64,000 bases of DNA from Pelomyxa schiedti (Eukaryota; Protista; Evosea): NCBI GenBank assembly GCA_020536535.1, contig JAHLWZ010000834.1, positions 26,337-90,336 on the forward strand, written 5' to 3'. Of this stretch, positions 32,845 to 43,064 are shown in pieces. Position 1 is the first letter of the stretch, and the number at the start of each line of letters is the position of its first letter. The notes beneath the pieces were generated by a model that saw only the letters and a program-made list of their open reading frames with translations, was not told the origin of the DNA and made no database searches. Both the position numbers and the translations under genes were made by a program.

Positions 32845-35385
32845 TTACGTGATAAGGCAATTAGAGGGTTTCTCCACAGAATAGGCTCCTCTGCGTGTTG
32901 CTGTTGTTCGTATTGCCCCAGGTGATGTGGGAAGAATCTGGCGCGATAGAAAGTCCTCGCCCAAAAGCTGTGCCATGCGGAAGAAGGCCAGGTCAACATT
33001 CTCGTTGGTCTTGGCACTGGTTTCAATGTAGTCTACTATGCGTTTGGTGGGATCGTGGTGCTCCGCGATAGTTCTGGAATGAAGGAAGTCATGGACCTGG
33101 GTGCGTTAAAGTCGATTTGATTGTGAAGATAGTTTTTTTTTTTTTTTGGGAACCTGGGAACAGGAAACTAGCCTTGCCGCAGTTTTATCTCTTTTGTTTC
33201 CGACGATCAAGATTACCTTTGGATCAGCTCTTATTGCCTCCTTATGCGCGGTTAAGATCAAGAAAGCATGACAGGAAAACGCGCCTGGAAGAACTGTTCA
33301 ACGGCAGAAAAAGATGAAGCCTCAGTCAGATCAAACACAATAATTACCCCAGGGACAGTGTATGAGTGAGGTGTTATCGTCCGGAACCTAGCAGGTAGTT
33401 ACAACGGGTATTGACAACAGTATAACCACCTCTCTTGACCAGCAGTCTCCCAGATTTGCATCTTGATAGTAAGACCGCAAATGTCTACTGTCCTGAAAGT
33501 ATGTTTGTACATAGTATTGTTATTTGACCTTACTTAATTTTGAAATCAACACCAATTGTTGGTATGTATGAGTCAGTGAATTCGCCATCTGCAAACCGTA
33601 GAAGGAGGCATGACTTCCCCACACCAGCACCACCAAGGATAACTATCTGTTGAGAAGTTAATTTTCCTTAAATTCAGCGATTGAAAACCTTGAATATACA
33701 GTCATACTCAAAAGCCATGGAATTTGTCTTGGGAATGTGCACAGGGGGCGCAACGAGGGCCGCTCCGACGTCACTATGCAGTTGTGAATAGCCCATTGTG
33801 GGGGAATGGTAGTACTCGAAGGCTTCCTTTGCAACAAAAAAAGATAGTTGTGAGACTAAGAGATTTATTTGCTTCATGCGTAAAACAAACCTTGGAGGCG
33901 GAAATAGACTCCCAGTACGCCTTTGATAGAAGAATTTGCTTCGATAACTTCATCAATGCCTTGCAGACCCGCTGTACACGATACAAGTCTTTGGGGAGAA
34001 GCATGGACAGTATTTGTATAACTACATCTTGGGGAAATGTCATCAGATGCTTCAAAGTGCGTAAATTCCAAGAAAAATGAATGGTGTTGGTACTGTCGAA
34101 AGCAAGCGAACGATTGGTTCAGGTGTACCAAATGAAATTGCCCAATCAACACAGTTGTTCCCTCCTTGAACATCCTGAAGGCGTTTATTTCCCCACTAGT
34201 AAGTTGGTTTTGCCACCTACATTCGGGTCTGCTCCAGCCTGTAACAGTAATTGTATTATAGAAGTGTCACACTTCCCTCGTAAGGCATGGAATAGAAGGC
34301 CAAAGCCATCAGGTCCGGTAGTATTAATTGTACGTTGTACAAGGTCAAATGCCAAGAGAAGACGAATCGCAATTAAATTCTTGGATTTCACAGCAACAAA
34401 GAGTGGGGTCTCTCCTGAAATAGATTTGAACATTATTTGCATTGAGTAAGAGCAACCATACCACTTGCGTTTTGTTCCACAACCACTCGGTCATTTACTG
34501 CTACGATTGAGGAAAAGACAACTTTGAATTCATCTTCGTTCGTCTCAGGCCTCATCCGACACAAGTAAATAAGGGCAGAGGTTCCAAAATCGGTTTGCAT
34601 AGTGAGATCTGCGCCTGATTGGATGAGGTATCGGGCAACCTAAGAGTGTTACTTGATTCAATCAGTACAAATATACACTACCGGTAAATGGCCCGCAGAC
34701 AATGCACAGAGAACGGGGGTCCGGCTGCTATAGTCCGTAGCATTCACTTTGGCCCCATTGTTGAGGAGCCATTTTGCTAACGCTAAATTTCCAGCAGTAC
34801 TTGACTACACCTTAGGAGGGAGGAATGTATAACATAGCACACCTGGCAGCATGTAATAATGTTTGGCCACTGGAATCAAAATCTTGAATCAGAGGGCTTT
34901 TTCGAGAGAGTTGAGTTATTTCAGCCACAAGTGCTTTGTTTGAGGGACTGTTGATCTCGGATGATGGGGGCATTGCCGTTATTTTATCTACAATCGAGCT
35001 GACATGCACATTGAAAGGAGGCTTGATGTGTGCTATCCAGTACACTGCGTAGTATTGCTTGAACTGGTGGGAAAGGAAAAAACCAAAAAGGAATAAAGAA
35101 AACTAACCATGTCTTTAGGAACTGTAAGCATAATTCTGGTGTGTAACACCTGATACGAAGCTGGAGGCACAACCACCAAGTTCGCGACTGAAGGTGACAC
35201 ACGGGCCCATACCCGTACACTGGGAAGCACACCATCCACAGGATATGGAGGACAAAAAGGAAGAATATACTCTCTTCTGAGGCTATTTTGTTTTAGTTTG
35301 AGATTACATAAGGCAGTGTCTGCAAAGTACGTAGTATTTTTTCCACTTTGGAAATGACAACTTCTCACCTAGGTAAAGATTAAAA

Positions 35386-35426
<41 letters not shown>

Positions 35427-35518
35427 GGCAGAGACTCGAAGAACGAAATAATAACACGACCAAATGCCTCCTCCTGGTCCTGGGTGTTAGATTTACCCGC
35501 CGCGCTTAAACCCTGCAT
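32845..35518 (-). CDS. Ankyrin-repeat / F-box / Rab1-like small GTPase fusion ending in a CaaX motif (CLIT)
   Basis: Ankyrin: [45 protein letters not shown]-box: [29 protein letters not shown]. GTPase: [37 protein letters not shown]. Confidence 0.8.
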
Positions 35519-38637: not shown

Positions 38638-40153
38638 TTATATGTGGGAGTGCCTATAGTGGGAGTGAGTCACAATGTTCTTTTCCATGAGAACAAGGGC
38701 TTTGCGGCGGTAGTGGAACAACACATAGAGGGCAAGCATAAGTCCCAGCAGAAGAATATCTCCGGCAGTTGAAACTATAATAAGTGTAATCTTTCTCACA
38801 TACTCTTCCTCATCCACATCCATCCATTCCACCACAATTGCGTTCTCGGAGATTCCGTAAGCAAAGGTGTCGTTGTTCTCCACTATTGATAGGGCCACTA
38901 CGCTGTCAGTTGTTCCACTCTGCAGGCCGCCATGGGCATCGTCGTCAAACCACTTCTTCATGCAGCGGGAAGCGGAGCGGGCTTCTTCTGTGTTGCAGTT
39001 AAGGTTGCTTGAGGTATCACAAATGGCAAAGAATGTAACAGGCTCAATCCCTGGTGTTTCAGGTGTCTCCAGCCTCCCTAAAATTGGTGCCACACAGGTA
39101 TAGGAGCCACTTGAGTCCGCCGATCCAGATATTGCATCAGTGCCAATACGTGCATTGTAGAATTGAAACACGCTGGCTTCAGTGTAGTTATTATTAAGGG
39201 GGACACCGGTGTTGACATCCAGAACAACGGATGCAAATGGAGCCACCTTAAGAAACAGCCATCCAGAAGAAAATACGAAAGCCGGAACCGTGATAAGAAG
39301 GAAAATGAGCCCACTGCTGCACACCACTGTAGGATAAACTTGCTCTCGATGGAAAAGCCTTCTAGCATCATTGAAGAACCATTCGTTGAGTACCTTACTC
39401 TTAAATGTTCCGCACCAGAGTATCATCAGTACAACACACCCTAAAAAAAAAACAGCATTAGCTACTGCTATCAATCAAACAAAAAACAGGGAGAGAATAC
39501 AGCACGAGAACATTACCTCCGGCCAAGCCAACCACCATTCCCGTGATAACAGACACAAAGCCAAGTCCAAACGCGAGCACTTGAGAAAGGTACACAACGG
39601 CCACCGTGAGGAGTATGAATGCGCCCCCCAGCCTCAACAGTCGCAGCAGCTTCCTCGGGGCGGGCACGTCGGCCTCGGGGAACAGCGGCTCCGAGTCCAC
39701 GCCGGCCCCGCGGCCCCCCGCTGCGCCCGCCCCCGCGCCGTCCGGGCCCCCCACGCCCGTCACCAGGACCCCGCCGCCCCCGCTGCGGCCCCGCTCCTGG
39801 TGGCGGTGGTGGTGCTTGTGCTTGTGGTGGTGGGGGTGCTCGGCGGGCTGCGGCTGCGGCTGGGGCTGGGTCTGGGCTCCGGCGGAGCTGTCTGGCTGCT
39901 GGTGGCTGCTGGGCTTGGGGCTGCGGCTGTGGCTGGGACTGGGGGTGGGGCTGGTGCTCGGGCTGTGGCTGTGGGTGTGCTTGTGGCTTGGGGAGGTGGG
40001 CTGGGGCGACTGGCTGTGGTGGTGGTGATGGTGGTGTGTGTCGGGATTGCGGGAGGGAGCGACACCGACATCGGTTGCGGTTGCCGGGGGGTTTTCGTCC
40101 CTTCGTTGTTCGGCGGAAAGAAGTCCCACTTTGGCCTCGTCGTCTTCGGTCAT
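38638..40153 (-). CDS. Multi-pass membrane protein with a His/Ser/Pro-rich cytosolic N-terminus and a Cys-containing loop
   Basis: Two large exons with ~5 hydrophobic segments; CVAPI-type loop; no confident family. Confidence 0.65.
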
Positions 40154-40241
40154 TTTTTTTTTAATTTTTCTTCTTGTCGTTGCCTTCGCTTTCCAGTTTT
40201 CTTGCACATTGATCAAGATCCCTTTGATCGTCTATGCCATA

Positions 40242-40340
40242 ATTATGAAATTTCTAGCTCACTCTGCGGCAGCGTTGGCGGGGATCACTTCCCCTGATGA
40301 AAAGGATGATTCAAGTAATCACCATCTTTCGGCTGATCCC
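40242..40340 (+). ncRNA. Box C/D snoRNA predicted to guide LSU rRNA 2'-O-methylation at the yeast Am807 / human Am1511-equivalent site
   Basis: Guide TCACCATCTTTCGG (40319-40332) directly precedes D box CTGA (40333-40336) and is complementary to conserved LSU CCGAAAGAUGGUGA. CTGATGA at 40294-40300 and GGATGA at 40304-40309 supply C or D'/C' boxes. The 5' end is uncertain. Confidence 0.7.
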
Positions 40341-40477
40341 ATGTGAGTGATTTATACTTGTCTCTGATTATGTGTTTGCTTTTTTTTTTTGGAGCCTTCC
40401 ATACCTGCCTTTTTGTTTTGGTGAAAGCGAAAGTGGCAGTGTCCGAATGAAATGTGGCAGGAGATAGGATAGCTATC

Positions 40478-42687
40478 TTAGCTTAATTTACACGTATCTT
40501 TGAGTTTGTGTTTTGAGGGGTGACTGGGAGGCAAACAGACAGCCCTGATAGCATAGTCCAAAGCTTCTTGCACACCCAATTGATTGTGAAGGTTCCTTGA
40601 TGACGTTTCAAAGTACCCAAATGCACCAATGCTTCTGGCCAAGGCAGATGCTTCCTCAAAGGAAACAACTTCTGTAGGTGGCACCAGTGCTACCATATCC
40701 AATTTTGTGCCTGTGGTGGTTGGTGATTACTTTCAAAAAAGGGCACTCATATGTATAGTTTGACTAGCACAACAACCACATACCTACTATTATGAACCTC
40801 ACACCTGGGCAGTGCCTGGTCACATCTGGAAGCCACCGCTTCTTGATGTTGAGAAAGCTTTCCCTTGACGTCAGTGAAAAGAAGAAGATAAAGACATCTG
40901 TTGGTGGGTAGCTCAATGGTCTCTGTATTATTTTTTTTGGGTTTTAGTTTTCCTTTTTTAATTGGCCAGTGCGCCACCAGTCCCCATCCATCCCTTCATT
41001 TAATTTAACAGCATACAAGGCGGTCGTAAGAGGCATCTCCCATTGTATCCCACAACCCAAGATTGACTGACATCCAACCATCAAGAACAATAGAGCGGCT
41101 TATGTAGTCACATATCGTCCCAGTGCCTCCCAGAAATGCAGTTTTCCCTGTGCCCGAATCTCCAACAAGCACGCACTTGAGACACTGGGTTCCTCCACTT
41201 GCCAAGGAGCTATTGGCGCGTGGCTTGCCAAAAGACACCCACGCAGAATTGAGAGGTGTAGGCCTAATTACTGAGTGATATACACTCCTGGGGTCAGACC
41301 CTCCAGGAATTGACATAATCTCTTCTTGTTGTAGAAGCCGGCTCCACAATGAGGGGTGCAGAGTAGCACGGTTCCATGATTCTGCGAGAATTAGGGCAGT
41401 ATTTCTACCGAAAATGTGAAATGGAGACATACTACAAACTCTTGCACACATGGCAATTCCTGCCAAGGGGAGAAAAGAAAATATTTCAACAAGACATAAC
41501 AGAGGAAAGTTTTCAGCTTGAAGGAGTCCACCCAGGTTTCTTTGGGGAGAGCTTAACTCCTTCAATATTTTCAAATCCCCAGAGCAGCGGGGACCCAACA
41601 ACATTGGGTCCGCACGAAGGAAAAACCACATGGACTTCCGTTCCTGAGAAGAGTCTGGAGATGGTACAACCCGGTGAAGAGTGGGTTTTATTCCCTCATC
41701 GTTTTCTCTGCAAGCTGGCACAAGGTATTTCATATCTATCAAAATCATCATGAACTCAAGAAGTAAAATGCAGAGAAGTCAAATCACCTGTTCCGACGAG
41801 AATGGTGATCCAGCTAAAAGGCTTGTCATCAGTTCTACCATTATCCCTGGGGGGCTCCACTGGCCTCCATTGAGGGGGGTTCCCCTCAAACACTTCCAGG
41901 CCACCTCTGTCCCCACACCCAACAACCAATAGTCCGGTGTCAACATGCTCTCCCTCACCAGCACCGTCCCCAATCCCAGCCCCAGGGAAAGAGCGGAACA
42001 TTCTCACAAAGGAGCAATTCGGTGGTCCTATAAACTTCAATCCAGTGAGGCCTGCATGTTGTGCAACAAAGGCTCGGCAAAGCCTGTTGAAACCAGAAAA
42101 ACATGTTTCCAGACAAGCACGGAATTCATCAGAAGGAAGGGAAGCCAAATCTGCCGATTCCCTACGCAACTGGATTTAGTTCCTATGTTAGTTCGACTGT
42201 GAGTACACAAAACATGTACAACCCCCAACCAATCCTTTCCAAAAGCATAAAAAAAAAAAAATGAATAAGAAATACAGAATATAAGGGGACTGGCAAGCAC
42301 CTGCAGTGTGTCCTTTCCGTTATTCCATAAATAGAATTCGCCCGAGTCCGCATGCGCCAGCAGAGGGGGCTGGTACACATCCATTCCCGTCCCATAATCT
42401 CCACGCCCCCCAGTGCTAGTGCCGGTGGTCGTTGTCGTCACGGCAGCTGTGGTGGTGGTGGTGCTGCTGCCGAGGGCACTGGGACCGAGACCCCCCGGGG
42501 GAAGTGTAGTCTTTGTCGGCGGCGGCGGGGGTGCACGAGGGGGCAGCAGGTTCATGTCGTGCATGCTGTCGATGAGGCCAGGTAGCAGGGCCAGGGCACT
42601 ACGGCACGCGGCGGCCTCCTCCGGCCCCAACACCCCGTACCTCACTCCCCCGTGCTCCACGTACTCGCTGTTGCTAGTGTCACTCAT
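40478..42687 (-). CDS. 2OG-Fe(II) dioxygenase / F-box / atypical Rho GTPase fusion ending in a CaaX motif (CKLS)
   Basis: Dioxygenase: GEHVDTGLL, GGLEV, ILVGT|DMKYL, TLHRVV, ERKSMWFF. F-box: FPLLCLVEIFSFLPLAGIAMCARVC|KSWNRATLHPSLW. Rho: LKCVLVGDSGTGKT, LGLWDTMG..YDRL|RPLSYQQTDVF, RWLPDVTRHCP, GTKLD, YFETSS. Confidence 0.82.
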
Positions 42688-43064
42688 TTTTTCGTCCGCT
42701 TTTTTCGTGAGTCCTACCCCACTGGGCAACAATTGTAATCTCAAACCAGTGCCTGAGGCCAACCCAGGGAAGCAAAAACAGGAAAAAAATGGAAGAAGGG
42801 GCAGCTCCTCTTGTGATCCAGTTTGTGATTTATCGGTAAAGAGAAAGGGAGTGGTGTTGATGGCGTTTCAGGGACAACCGGCACCAAAACACCAACGCAC
42901 ACGTTAAAAAAAAAAACACGGAGTGCAAACCCAAACACTTCAACCTGTGCAGTACAACGGAGCACGAGGCATTAATAATATTTTCCCCCGCCTGTATTAT
43001 CTATCAGAATGGCTGATATTATGTATCCCACCCCACTATCCCCAAAATGATGCATGCACCACCA

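What the first reader, a model, noticed from the sequence alone, without database searches (positions are those of the whole stretch)
40478..42687. 2OG-Fe(II) dioxygenase - F-box - atypical Rho - CaaX in one protein: candidate oxygen-sensing SCF adaptor
Seen: one spliced frame carries a dioxygenase with an intact HxD...H iron triad and RxS 2OG-binding motif (EHVDTG, TLHRVV, ERKS), then an F-box, a Rho fold and terminal CKLS. The HRV/RKS motifs, the F-box and the P-loop all lie in the same uninterrupted ORF (41005-41751), so the fusion does not depend on my splicing. Known: these enzymes need O2; F-boxes bind Skp1; Dictyostelium senses O2 by 2OG-dependent hydroxylation of Skp1 (PhyA); RhoBTB proteins link Rho folds to cullin ligases. 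Inference: a membrane-tethered module coupling O2-dependent hydroxylation to SCF ubiquitylation or cytoskeletal control, which would be notable if the host is a microaerophilic amoeba. I know of no described protein with this architecture.
Basis: partly seen in the sequence, partly recalled or inferred. Interest (0 to 1): 0.88.

Follow-up and report, generated by a model that had tools for sequence, protein, structure and literature searches.

The report
Oxygenase–F-box–Rho fusion protein, Pelomyxa
An anaerobic amoeba (Pelomyxa schiedti) expresses one spliced gene that joins an oxygen-requiring enzyme domain, a ubiquitin-ligase docking motif (F-box) and a lipid-anchored, switch-defective Rho GTPase. 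The combination is real and conserved in a few other amoeboid protists, but its function is untested.

Summary
Window 42687-40478 (minus strand) is one six-exon gene of Pelomyxa schiedti encoding 602 aa. Spliced RNA contigs support all five GT..AG introns.

The domains are:
- a 2OG/Fe(II) oxygenase of the PF03171 (thymine hydroxylase/ACC oxidase/IPNS) class, with HxD..H and RxS invariant in all eight family members and a predicted DSBH fold;
- an F-box (41.5 bits);
- a Rac-like domain with G12S, Q61D, a deleted switch I and a shortened Rho insert;
- a CKLS farnesylation box.

The architecture is not unique. Seven other proteins share it: Acrasis kona, an amoebozoan-like contig and protist metagenome contigs. 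F-box–Rho/Rab/Ran fusions are already catalogued in Naegleria, and this scan noted other F-box–GTPase fusions in the same genome.

My reading is a membrane-anchored SCF substrate receptor carrying an active oxygenase. The O2-sensor/PhyA analogy is only weakly supported: the enzyme belongs to a different class, and the family also occurs in an aerobic slime mould. It is a new variant of a known kind, of moderate interest.

The parts
42688..42696 (-). 5' UTR; probable mRNA 5' end at about 42696
   Evidence: The X1 RNA contig ends at 42696 and is followed by a loose end resembling a template-switch oligo (table 7). That reading of the oligo rests on my own knowledge of SMART-type libraries.
42301..42687 (-). 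Exon 1 (aa 1-129): N-terminal part of the oxygenase region, with a Pro/Thr-rich low-complexity insert
   Evidence: Translation equals P0001 1-129. The donor at 42300 is supported by RNA joint 42169/42301.
41788..42169 (-). Exon 2 (aa 130-257): oxygenase core with HxD (H204, D206 at 41947-41939)
   Evidence: RNA joints 42169/42301 and 41735/41788. HVD translation. Invariant H85/D87 in alignments A1-A3.
41433..41735 (-). Exon 3a (aa 257-358): distal His277 (41676-41674), R289-x-S291 (41640-41632) and the first half of the F-box (from 41511)
   Evidence: Invariant H158, R170, S172.
41382..41432 (-).
   Evidence: The joint 41381/41433 is seen in two runs, X1 and X2. Ends checked. The F-box-like score rises from 23.3 bits unspliced to 41.5 bits spliced.
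41017..41381 (-). Exon 3b (aa 358-479): second half of the F-box (to 41329), linker, Rho P-loop (41178-41140), degenerate switch I, switch II DTMGDASYDRL
   Evidence: Rac1 alignment.
40784..40922 (-). Exon 4 (aa 480-526): Rho core RPLSYPPTDVF...
   Evidence: Pfam Ras positions 66-110. RNA joints 40922/41017 and 40709/40783.
40478..40710 (-). Exon 5 (aa 526-602 plus stop): TKLD, ETSS, basic tail, CaaX box CKLS (40492-40481), stop 40480-40478
   Evidence: Pfam Ras positions 113-160. Translation. RNA contig X1 record 1 is contiguous over 40465-40709, so it reads through the donor used by the NCBI model.

Best explanation
This is a single expressed gene of Pelomyxa schiedti for a 602-aa, C-terminally farnesylated F-box protein.

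Shown:
- The five-intron structure and the continuity of the oxygenase, F-box and Rho parts on RNA.
- A PF03171-class 2OG/Fe(II) oxygenase domain whose iron ligands (H204, D206, H277) and 2OG-binding R289-x-S291 are invariant across a family of eight proteins.
- A canonical F-box.
- A Rac-like G domain that keeps the P-loop Lys/Thr, the DxxG Asp/Gly and TKLD. It has lost Gly12 (Ser), Gln61 (Asp), the PTVFD switch-I segment and part of the Rho insert.
- A CaaX box ending in Ser.

Inferred mechanism: the F-box docks the protein on Skp1-Cul1, which makes it a substrate receptor of a membrane-bound SCF ubiquitin ligase. The farnesylated, probably GTPase-dead Rho-like domain sits where F-box proteins normally carry their substrate-binding domain. 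It supplies membrane targeting and binds Rho partners, much as RhoBTB does for Cul3. The N-terminal oxygenase adds an O2-, 2OG- and Fe-dependent catalytic step of unknown substrate to the same complex.

In evolutionary terms it is an F-box-Rho-CaaX protein, a type catalogued in Naegleria, that gained an oxygenase at its N-terminus. The Pelomyxa branch then let the GTPase switch decay.

The confidence figure is for the whole statement. The architecture and transcript alone are about 0.95; the SCF-receptor mechanism is about 0.5.
For: - Splicing and continuity: five GT..AG joints in RNA contigs from three single-cell transcriptomes, with one contig covering 41839-40465.
- Identity: P0001, 'rho gtpase [Pelomyxa schiedti]', equals the exon translations over residues 1-582.
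- Domains: Ras 8.5e-25 and F-box-like 1.1e-10.
- Family: P0002, P0004, P0005, P0007, P0008, P0010 and P0071 share the order oxygenase, F-box, Rho, CaaX. PF03171 is over its cut-off in P0002, P0005, P0008 and P0010, and is among the precomputed Pfam domains of P0071.
- Catalytic residues: H, D, H, R and S are invariant.
- Oxygenase homology: hhalign 97.3%. The profile hits T7H, ACC oxidase, EFE and IPNS at 3e-11 to 1e-7. AF2 pLDDT 80 with Foldseek probability 1.0 to 3on7, 5c3p and 5gja, and atlas TM 0.70-0.72.
- Rho domain: Rac1 is the best hit at 8.5e-36, and the alignment shows the substitutions and deletions.
- F-box: nearest solved sequences are FBXL2 and KDM2B.
- Skp1 genes are present in the genome.
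- Literature: Naegleria F-box-GTPase fusions, read there as GTPase-dependent ubiquitination (PMC8296547 supplements).
Against: - No binding, enzymatic or localisation data exist for any member.
- The Pelomyxa oxygenase domain itself is below Pfam thresholds.
- The full-length AF2 model is poor (pLDDT 57), so domain packing is unknown.
- Skp1 binding was not modelled.
- Some F-box proteins act without a cullin (Roy1-Ypt52, PMC3084679), or use the F-box mainly for their own turnover.
- All RNA comes from one study and one sample. Exon 1 is only partly covered, and it carries an odd 239-nt skip.
Confidence: 0.55

Rival explanations
1. Oxygen-gated SCF. The oxygenase hydroxylates Skp1, another SCF subunit or the recruited substrate, so that ubiquitylation or Rho-type signalling at the membrane reports O2 to an anaerobe. 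This would be functionally analogous to PhyA-Skp1 in Dictyostelium.
For: - The catalytic residues are conserved in all members, and every 2OG oxygenase needs O2 (established knowledge).
- The host is an anaerobe with methanogenic symbionts (PMC8887013, PMC10579272).
- The six-frame search found no PF13640 (PhyA-type) enzyme, nor any other 2OG-oxygenase family, in the assembly.
- Pelomyxa Skp1 keeps the Pro of ..NDFTPEEEEQ...
- The F-box would hold the enzyme next to the Skp1 C-terminus.
Against: - The domain belongs to the RxS/PF03171 clade. Its nearest solved relatives act on small molecules: thymine, ACC, penicillin and gibberellin precursors. It does not belong to the prolyl-4-hydroxylase clade.
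- The family is also present in the aerobic Acrasis kona.
- The genome-wide negatives are weak, because the gene itself does not ring in that search.
- No kinetic or substrate data exist.
Confidence: 0.1
2. The protein is a membrane oxygenase regulated by its GTPase and by turnover. It is primarily a small-molecule oxygenase placed on membranes by the farnesylated Rho-like domain. The F-box serves only to control its own abundance, through autoubiquitylation or Skp1 binding.
For: - The nearest relatives of the oxygenase are metabolic enzymes.
- Vargova et al. proposed GTPase control of enzyme activity for an Arf-2OG oxygenase fusion in Emiliania (PMC8358228).
- F-box proteins are commonly unstable through autoubiquitylation (established knowledge).
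Against: - The F-box is as well conserved as the catalytic residues across about 28% identity.
- F-box-GTPase fusions without any enzyme are frequent in Naegleria and in this genome. This points to the F-box-GTPase pair as the functional core.
- In the Pelomyxa branch the GTPase switch is degenerate, so it would be a poor regulator.
Confidence: 0.18
3. Non-SCF F-box function. The F-box-Skp1 pair acts without a cullin as a regulator or chaperone of the attached GTPase domain, as yeast Roy1-Skp1 does for Ypt52.
For: A precedent exists for a cullin-independent F-box protein that controls a small GTPase (PMC3084679). The Rho domain here is non-canonical.
Against: The F-box is canonical and closest to SCF-type FBXL2 and KDM2B. 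There are no data either way on cullin binding.
Confidence: 0.08
4. Annotation artefact: two or three neighbouring genes (oxygenase, F-box protein, Rho) wrongly read as one.
For: The public model for this locus is itself wrong at its 3' end: it is 942 aa and merged with the downstream membrane-protein gene. Exon 1 to exon 2 continuity rests on overlapping contigs, not on a single contig.
Against: - One RNA contig joins the end of the oxygenase exon, the F-box, the Rho exons and the stop.
- Catalytic motifs, F-box and P-loop share exons 3a and 3b.
- The same domain order occurs in intronless single ORFs on metagenome contigs and in Acrasis kona.
Confidence: 0.02

Closest known systems
F-box-Rac/Rho-CaaX fusion proteins of Naegleria gruberi and N. 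fowleri (catalogued in Herman et al. 2021, PMC8296547, Additional files 4 and 10)
   Same: The F-box lies N-terminal to a Rho-family G domain. The protein ends in a basic stretch and a CaaX box, often CxxQ as in this family. Those authors read the fusions as GTPase-dependent ubiquitylation.
   Different: No oxygenase domain is reported there. Those proteins have nothing, Kelch or BTB before the F-box. Orthology with the present family was not tested. None has been characterised experimentally.
RhoBTB (atypical Rho fused to BTB domains; Cul3 substrate adaptor)
   Same: An atypical, switch-defective Rho domain is joined covalently to a cullin-ligase docking module.
   Different: RhoBTB docks through BTB to Cul3, not through an F-box to Skp1-Cul1. 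Its Rho domain is N-terminal. It has no oxygenase. No BTB domain was found here.
KDM2A/KDM2B (JHDM1; JmjC 2OG oxygenase - CXXC - PHD - F-box - LRR)
   Same: A 2OG/Fe(II) oxygenase sits N-terminal to an F-box in one polypeptide, followed by a C-terminal interaction domain. The KDM2B F-box is among the closest solved F-box sequences.
   Different: That oxygenase is JmjC, a histone demethylase, not the PF03171/RxS type. It is nuclear and chromatin-bound, not prenylated. Its C-terminal domain is LRR, not Rho.
FBXL2 (CaaX-prenylated F-box protein)
   Same: An F-box protein anchored to membranes by a C-terminal CaaX box. It is the best solved F-box match (4.2e-5).
   Different: FBXL2 has an LRR substrate domain, geranylgeranyl rather than predicted farnesyl, and no oxygenase or G domain.
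PhyA-Skp1 oxygen sensing in Dictyostelium and Toxoplasma
   Same: A 2OG oxygenase is functionally linked to SCF. Pelomyxa Skp1 keeps the target Pro.
   Different: PhyA is a separate, cytoplasmic PF13640-class prolyl 4-hydroxylase. The domain here belongs to another clade, and nothing shows that it acts on Skp1.
Thymine 7-hydroxylase, ACC oxidase, ethylene-forming enzyme and IPNS-type 2OG oxygenases (PF03171)
   Same: Sequence-profile and fold matches, the HxD..H triad and the RxS 2OG-binding motif.
   Different: Those are free-standing soluble enzymes of 280-350 aa with a full DIOX_N region. Here the domain is fused to an F-box and a GTPase, and the substrate is unknown.

Membership tests
2OG-Fe(II) oxygenase superfamily, PF03171 class | HxD...H iron-binding facial triad | tested here: met
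   H204, D206 and H277 are present and invariant in 8/8 family members.
2OG-Fe(II) oxygenase superfamily, PF03171 class | RxS motif binding the 2OG C5 carboxylate | tested here: met
   R289 and S291 are present and invariant. They align to the RxS of T7H.
2OG-Fe(II) oxygenase superfamily, PF03171 class | Double-stranded beta-helix fold | tested here: met
   AF2 model pLDDT 80.2. Foldseek PDB probability 1.0, E 2.7e-8, TMq about 0.6 to 3on7, 5c3p and 5gja. Atlas TM 0.70-0.72 to PF03171 clusters. This is a predicted structure, not a solved one.
2OG-Fe(II) oxygenase superfamily, PF03171 class | Pfam gathering score on the protein itself | tested here: not met
   P0001 and its exons give no PF03171 hit at E<=0.1. 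Relatives P0002, P0005, P0008 and P0010 pass. The Pelomyxa domain aligns to their profile at 97.3%, E 2e-11.
2OG-Fe(II) oxygenase superfamily, PF03171 class | 2OG- and O2-dependent catalysis | not testable with these tools
   Needs a biochemical assay.
F-box proteins (SCF substrate receptors) | F-box motif above the curated threshold | tested here: met
   F-box-like 41.5 bits (cut-off 24.3) and F-box 28.6 bits (cut-off 20.5) on the spliced protein. The core reads LPxxxIxxxxxVCKSWxxxxxxxxLW.
F-box proteins (SCF substrate receptors) | Binds Skp1 and assembles with Cul1 | not tested
   Skp1 genes exist but are split into at least four short exons. No unjoined reference could be given to complex prediction.
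Rho family of small GTPases | Ras-superfamily G domain closest to Rho/Rac, with the Rho switch-II/beta-4 signature | tested here: met
   Ras 8.5e-25. The best solved matches are all Rac1 (8.5e-36), then Rac2/3, plant ROPs and Cdc42. The signature reads DTxGxxxYDRLRPLSYPPTDVF.
Rho family of small GTPases | Catalytic Gln61, Gly12 and switch-I Thr35 (a working GTPase switch) | tested here: not met
   G12S, Q61D and a gap of about 10 residues in place of YIPTVFD. The same decay is seen in P0002, P0004 and P0007. The motifs are canonical in P0005, P0008, P0010 and P0071.
Rho family of small GTPases | Rho insert helix | tested here: not met
   The alignment to Rac1 has gaps of 8 residues in the insert region. 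It is shorter still in P0010 and P0071.
Rho family of small GTPases | C-terminal CaaX prenylation box | tested here: met
   CKLS* lies at 40492-40478 and RNA reads through to it. Relatives end in CxxQ after a basic run. X = S or Q predicts farnesyl (established knowledge). The modification itself was not tested.
RhoBTB | Tandem BTB domains C-terminal to the Rho domain | tested here: not met
   No BTB hit.
PhyA/EGLN-type prolyl 4-hydroxylases | PF13640/P4Hc-type catalytic domain | tested here: not met
   No PF13640 hit. All profile and fold matches are to the PF03171 clade.
KDM2 (JmjC-F-box) | JmjC domain | tested here: not met
   No JmjC hit.

The most novel reading that the evidence does not exclude
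The F-box tethers the oxygenase beside the C-terminus of Skp1, or beside a substrate held by the Rho-like domain, and the oxygenase hydroxylates it. In an anaerobe that appears to lack a PhyA-type enzyme, assembly or output of a membrane SCF ligase would then be switched by O2. This would be an independently evolved, cis-acting counterpart of the Dictyostelium PhyA-Skp1 oxygen sensor, wired to Rho-type cytoskeletal partners.
Probability: 0.08. Interest if true: 0.85.

Novelty: new variant of a known kind. Interest (0 to 1): 0.55.

Why it matters
Small GTPases fused to cullin-ligase docking modules are a recurring but experimentally untouched theme in amoeboid protists. Examples are RhoBTB and the Naegleria F-box-Rab/Rho/Ran proteins.

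This family adds a catalytically intact 2OG/Fe(II) oxygenase to that design. It is conserved between Amoebozoa and Heterolobosea at about 28% identity, with every catalytic residue kept, which argues that the enzyme activity matters. It gives a concrete protein in which to test whether ubiquitylation at membranes can be coupled to O2, 2OG or iron availability.

In Pelomyxa it may be one of very few O2-dependent dioxygenases retained by an anaerobe. It also corrects a public gene model that is merged with its downstream neighbour.

Tried and rejected
- Exon-by-exon Pfam scans found Ras and a sub-threshold F-box but no oxygenase. The oxygenase assignment needed relatives.
- Two word-indexed homology searches were swamped by ordinary Rho proteins and added only P0079. 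The region-restricted search gave P0071, from Acrasis.
- The protein-atlas feature search gave no usable hit.
- The full-length AF2 model was too poor (pLDDT 57, pTM 0.37) to say anything about domain packing.
- A Skp1-F-box complex prediction was not run.
- For the same reason I never built the joined spliced protein myself. I used the database protein P0001, whose residues 1-582 equal the exon translations. I examined the last 20 residues only by window reference.
- Six-frame searches of the assembly for PF03171, PF13640, JmjC, AlkB-type and Cupin_8 found nothing. These are weak negatives, because the gene itself does not ring either.
- The 239-nt skip 42413-42651 in one RNA contig was considered as an extra intron. 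I rejected it as a probable template-switch or assembly artefact: its ends are GG..AC, it has 5-nt microhomology, and it breaks the frame.
- No paralogue of the oxygenase region was found in the genome.
Full report
**What is in the sequence.**

The finding lies on the minus strand. Exon-wise Pfam scans by reference placed three consecutive parts of the Ras profile on three separate exons: positions 1-64, 66-110 and 113-160. They also gave a just-sub-threshold F-box-like match (23.3 bits against 24.3). They gave no oxygenase hit.

**Transcript evidence.**

One study holds three single-cell RNA-seq runs of a "protist metagenome" and a DNA run that carries this stretch. Laying their contigs on 40300-42900 gave five joints:

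| Intron | Length |
|---|---|
| 42170-42300 | 131 nt |
| 41736-41787 | 52 nt |
| 41382-41432 | 51 nt |
| 40923-41016 | 94 nt |
| 40711-40783 | 73 nt |

All five are GT..AG on the minus strand.

It lies inside the "uninterrupted ORF", is in frame, and removes 17 codons from the F-box. After its removal the motif reads ...LPLAGIAMCARVC-K-SWNRATLHPSLW, the canonical VCKxW...LW core.

One 1107-nt contig runs from 41839 (end of exon 2) through exons 3a, 3b, 4 and 5 to 40465, beyond the stop. Two further contigs tile exon 2 and join it to exon 1. A loose end at 42696 looks like a template-switch oligo and probably marks the mRNA 5' end; that reading rests on my own knowledge.

The model is therefore six exons, 1809 nt and 602 aa.

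One contig also skips 239 nt of exon 1. Its ends are GG..AC, it has 5-nt microhomology, and it breaks the frame. I treat it as an artefact and list it as unexplained.

**Note on method.** An exhaustive phmmer search with the unspliced exon 3 returned database protein P0001. A later search names it "rho gtpase [Pelomyxa schiedti]". Each exon translation occurs in P0001 in order, covering its residues 1-582, and I used P0001 parts as references. P0001 continues to 942 aa because the public model splices from about 40541 into the downstream membrane-protein gene. The RNA contig instead reads straight through to CKLS*. The last 20 residues were examined only by window reference.

**Domains.**

*Pfam on P0001.* Ras scores 8.5e-25 (residues 426-576). 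F-box-like scores 1.1e-10 (41.5 bits) and F-box 1.2e-6. There is no oxygenase hit on the Pelomyxa protein alone.

*The family.* The phmmer search found six relatives (P0002, P0004, P0005, P0007, P0008, P0010). A region-restricted search added P0071, "Ras-related protein [Acrasis kona]".
- All have the same order: N-terminal domain, F-box, Rho.
- All complete ones end in a basic run and CxxQ.
- PF03171 (2OG-FeII_Oxy) passes its curated cut-off in P0002, P0005, P0008 and P0010. It is also precomputed for P0071.
- In the alignments the iron ligands (H204, D206, H277) and R289-x-S291 are invariant in all eight, although overall identity to the Pelomyxa protein is about 27-35%.

*The oxygenase domain.*
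- The Pelomyxa N-domain aligns to a profile of the relatives at 97.3% probability, E 2e-11, with the motifs in register.
- The family profile hits solved structures of thymine 7-hydroxylase (3e-11), ACC oxidase, ethylene-forming enzyme, GA oxidases and IPNS.
- An AF2 model of residues 120-325 (pLDDT 80.2) matches the same enzymes with Foldseek probability 1.0.
- It also matches PF03171 clusters of the ESM Atlas at TM 0.70-0.72.

The dioxygenase is therefore real and looks catalytically competent. It belongs to the RxS/PF03171 clade, whose nearest characterised members act on small molecules. It does not belong to the prolyl-4-hydroxylase (PhyA/EGLN) or JmjC clades.

*The Rho domain.* It is closest to Rac1 (8.5e-36). 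It keeps the P-loop Lys/Thr, DxxG, the RLRPLSYPPTDVF signature and TKLD. It has Ser for Gly12, Asp for Gln61, a gap of about 10 residues where switch I (YIPTVFD) should be, and a Rho insert shortened by 8 residues.

The motif table splits the family in two:
- The Pelomyxa group (P0001, P0002, P0004, P0007) has a decayed switch.
- The Acrasis group (P0005, P0008, P0010, P0071) has fully canonical Rho motifs.

The ancestral fusion therefore probably had a working GTPase.

*The F-box and the tail.* The nearest solved F-box sequences are FBXL2, itself a CaaX-prenylated F-box protein, and KDM2B, a 2OG oxygenase with an F-box. CaaX boxes ending in S or Q predict farnesylation (established knowledge).

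**Context.**
- The gene is single-copy in the assembly.
- P0007 sits on an 11-kb contig next to a STATa_Ig gene, which suggests an amoebozoan.
- P0010 and P0005 are intronless single ORFs on metagenome contigs. This independently shows that the three domains form one protein.
- Skp1 genes are present in at least five loci, each in several short exons, with the ..NDFTPEEEEQ.. proline kept.
- Six-frame searches found no other 2OG-oxygenase Pfam family in the assembly. This is a weak negative.
- The scan's own notes record an ankyrin-F-box-Rab gene in this window; I saw its F-box and ankyrin ORFs. They also record Rho-F-box-Vint genes elsewhere in the genome. F-box-GTPase fusions are thus a theme of this organism.

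**Literature.**
- Herman et al. [quoted passage not shown] They suggest GTPase-dependent ubiquitylation. No oxygenase is mentioned.
- Vargova et al. 2021 (PMC8358228) note Arf-F-box and Arf-2OG oxygenase fusions.
- The P. schiedti genome paper does not discuss this gene.
- I found no paper that describes the oxygenase-F-box-Rho combination.

**Interpretation.**

The best-supported reading is a farnesyl-anchored F-box protein, that is, a membrane SCF substrate receptor. Its C-terminal Rho-like domain occupies the position of the substrate-binding domain, and its N-terminal oxygenase adds an O2/2OG/Fe-dependent activity. The architecture, the transcript and the conservation of catalytic residues are shown. 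Skp1/Cul1 binding, prenylation, nucleotide state and enzyme substrate are inferred.

The enzyme class differs from PhyA, and the family also occurs in an aerobic organism.

The rivals are a GTPase-placed metabolic oxygenase whose F-box controls only its own turnover, a cullin-independent F-box function, and an annotation artefact. The last is essentially excluded.

**Verdict.** This is a real, expressed and conserved but uncharacterised domain combination. It is a new variant within the known class of F-box-small-GTPase fusions and atypical Rho cullin adaptors. Interest 0.55.

Noticed in passing
window 39458-40540 (minus strand), downstream of the gene: The public protein model (P0001, 942 aa) leaves exon 5 at about 40541. 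It continues into a downstream gene for a His/Pro-rich protein that looks, by eye, like a membrane protein. RNA contigs instead read through to the CKLS stop, so the NCBI model looks like a merge of two genes.
   Followed up: partly
window 42413-42651: One RNA contig skips 239 nt of exon 1, the Pro/Thr-rich low-complexity part. The ends are non-canonical (GG..AC) and there is 5-nt microhomology. The skip breaks the frame. It is probably a template-switch or assembly artefact. If it is real, Met-102 would be the next in-frame start.
   Followed up: partly
window 32845-35518 (minus strand): A second F-box gene lies nearby. ORF 33774-34055 carries an F-box-like motif (..[28 protein letters not shown]..) and ORF 34185-34442 carries ankyrin-like repeats. 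The scan's note s1-611529 reads the gene as ankyrin-F-box-Rab-CaaX. I did not check the Rab part.
   Followed up: partly
G000 contigs C76, C911, C832, C165, C1244 (loci L008-L014): There are at least five Skp1 loci in the assembly, each split into several short exons. The proline that PhyA hydroxylates in Dictyostelium Skp1 (..NDFTPEEEEQIRKENEW..) is conserved.
   Followed up: partly
whole assembly G000: Six-frame family searches found no PF03171, PF13640, JmjC, AlkB-type or Cupin_8 domains. If that holds, this gene would be one of very few 2OG oxygenases in the anaerobe. The negative is weak because exons are short and the gene itself does not ring.
   Followed up: partly
L001 1-5016 (metagenome contig carrying P0010): The intronless homologue P0010 lies between a multicopper-oxidase gene and a glutaredoxin gene, both redox- or O2-related. 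This may be coincidence.
   Followed up: no
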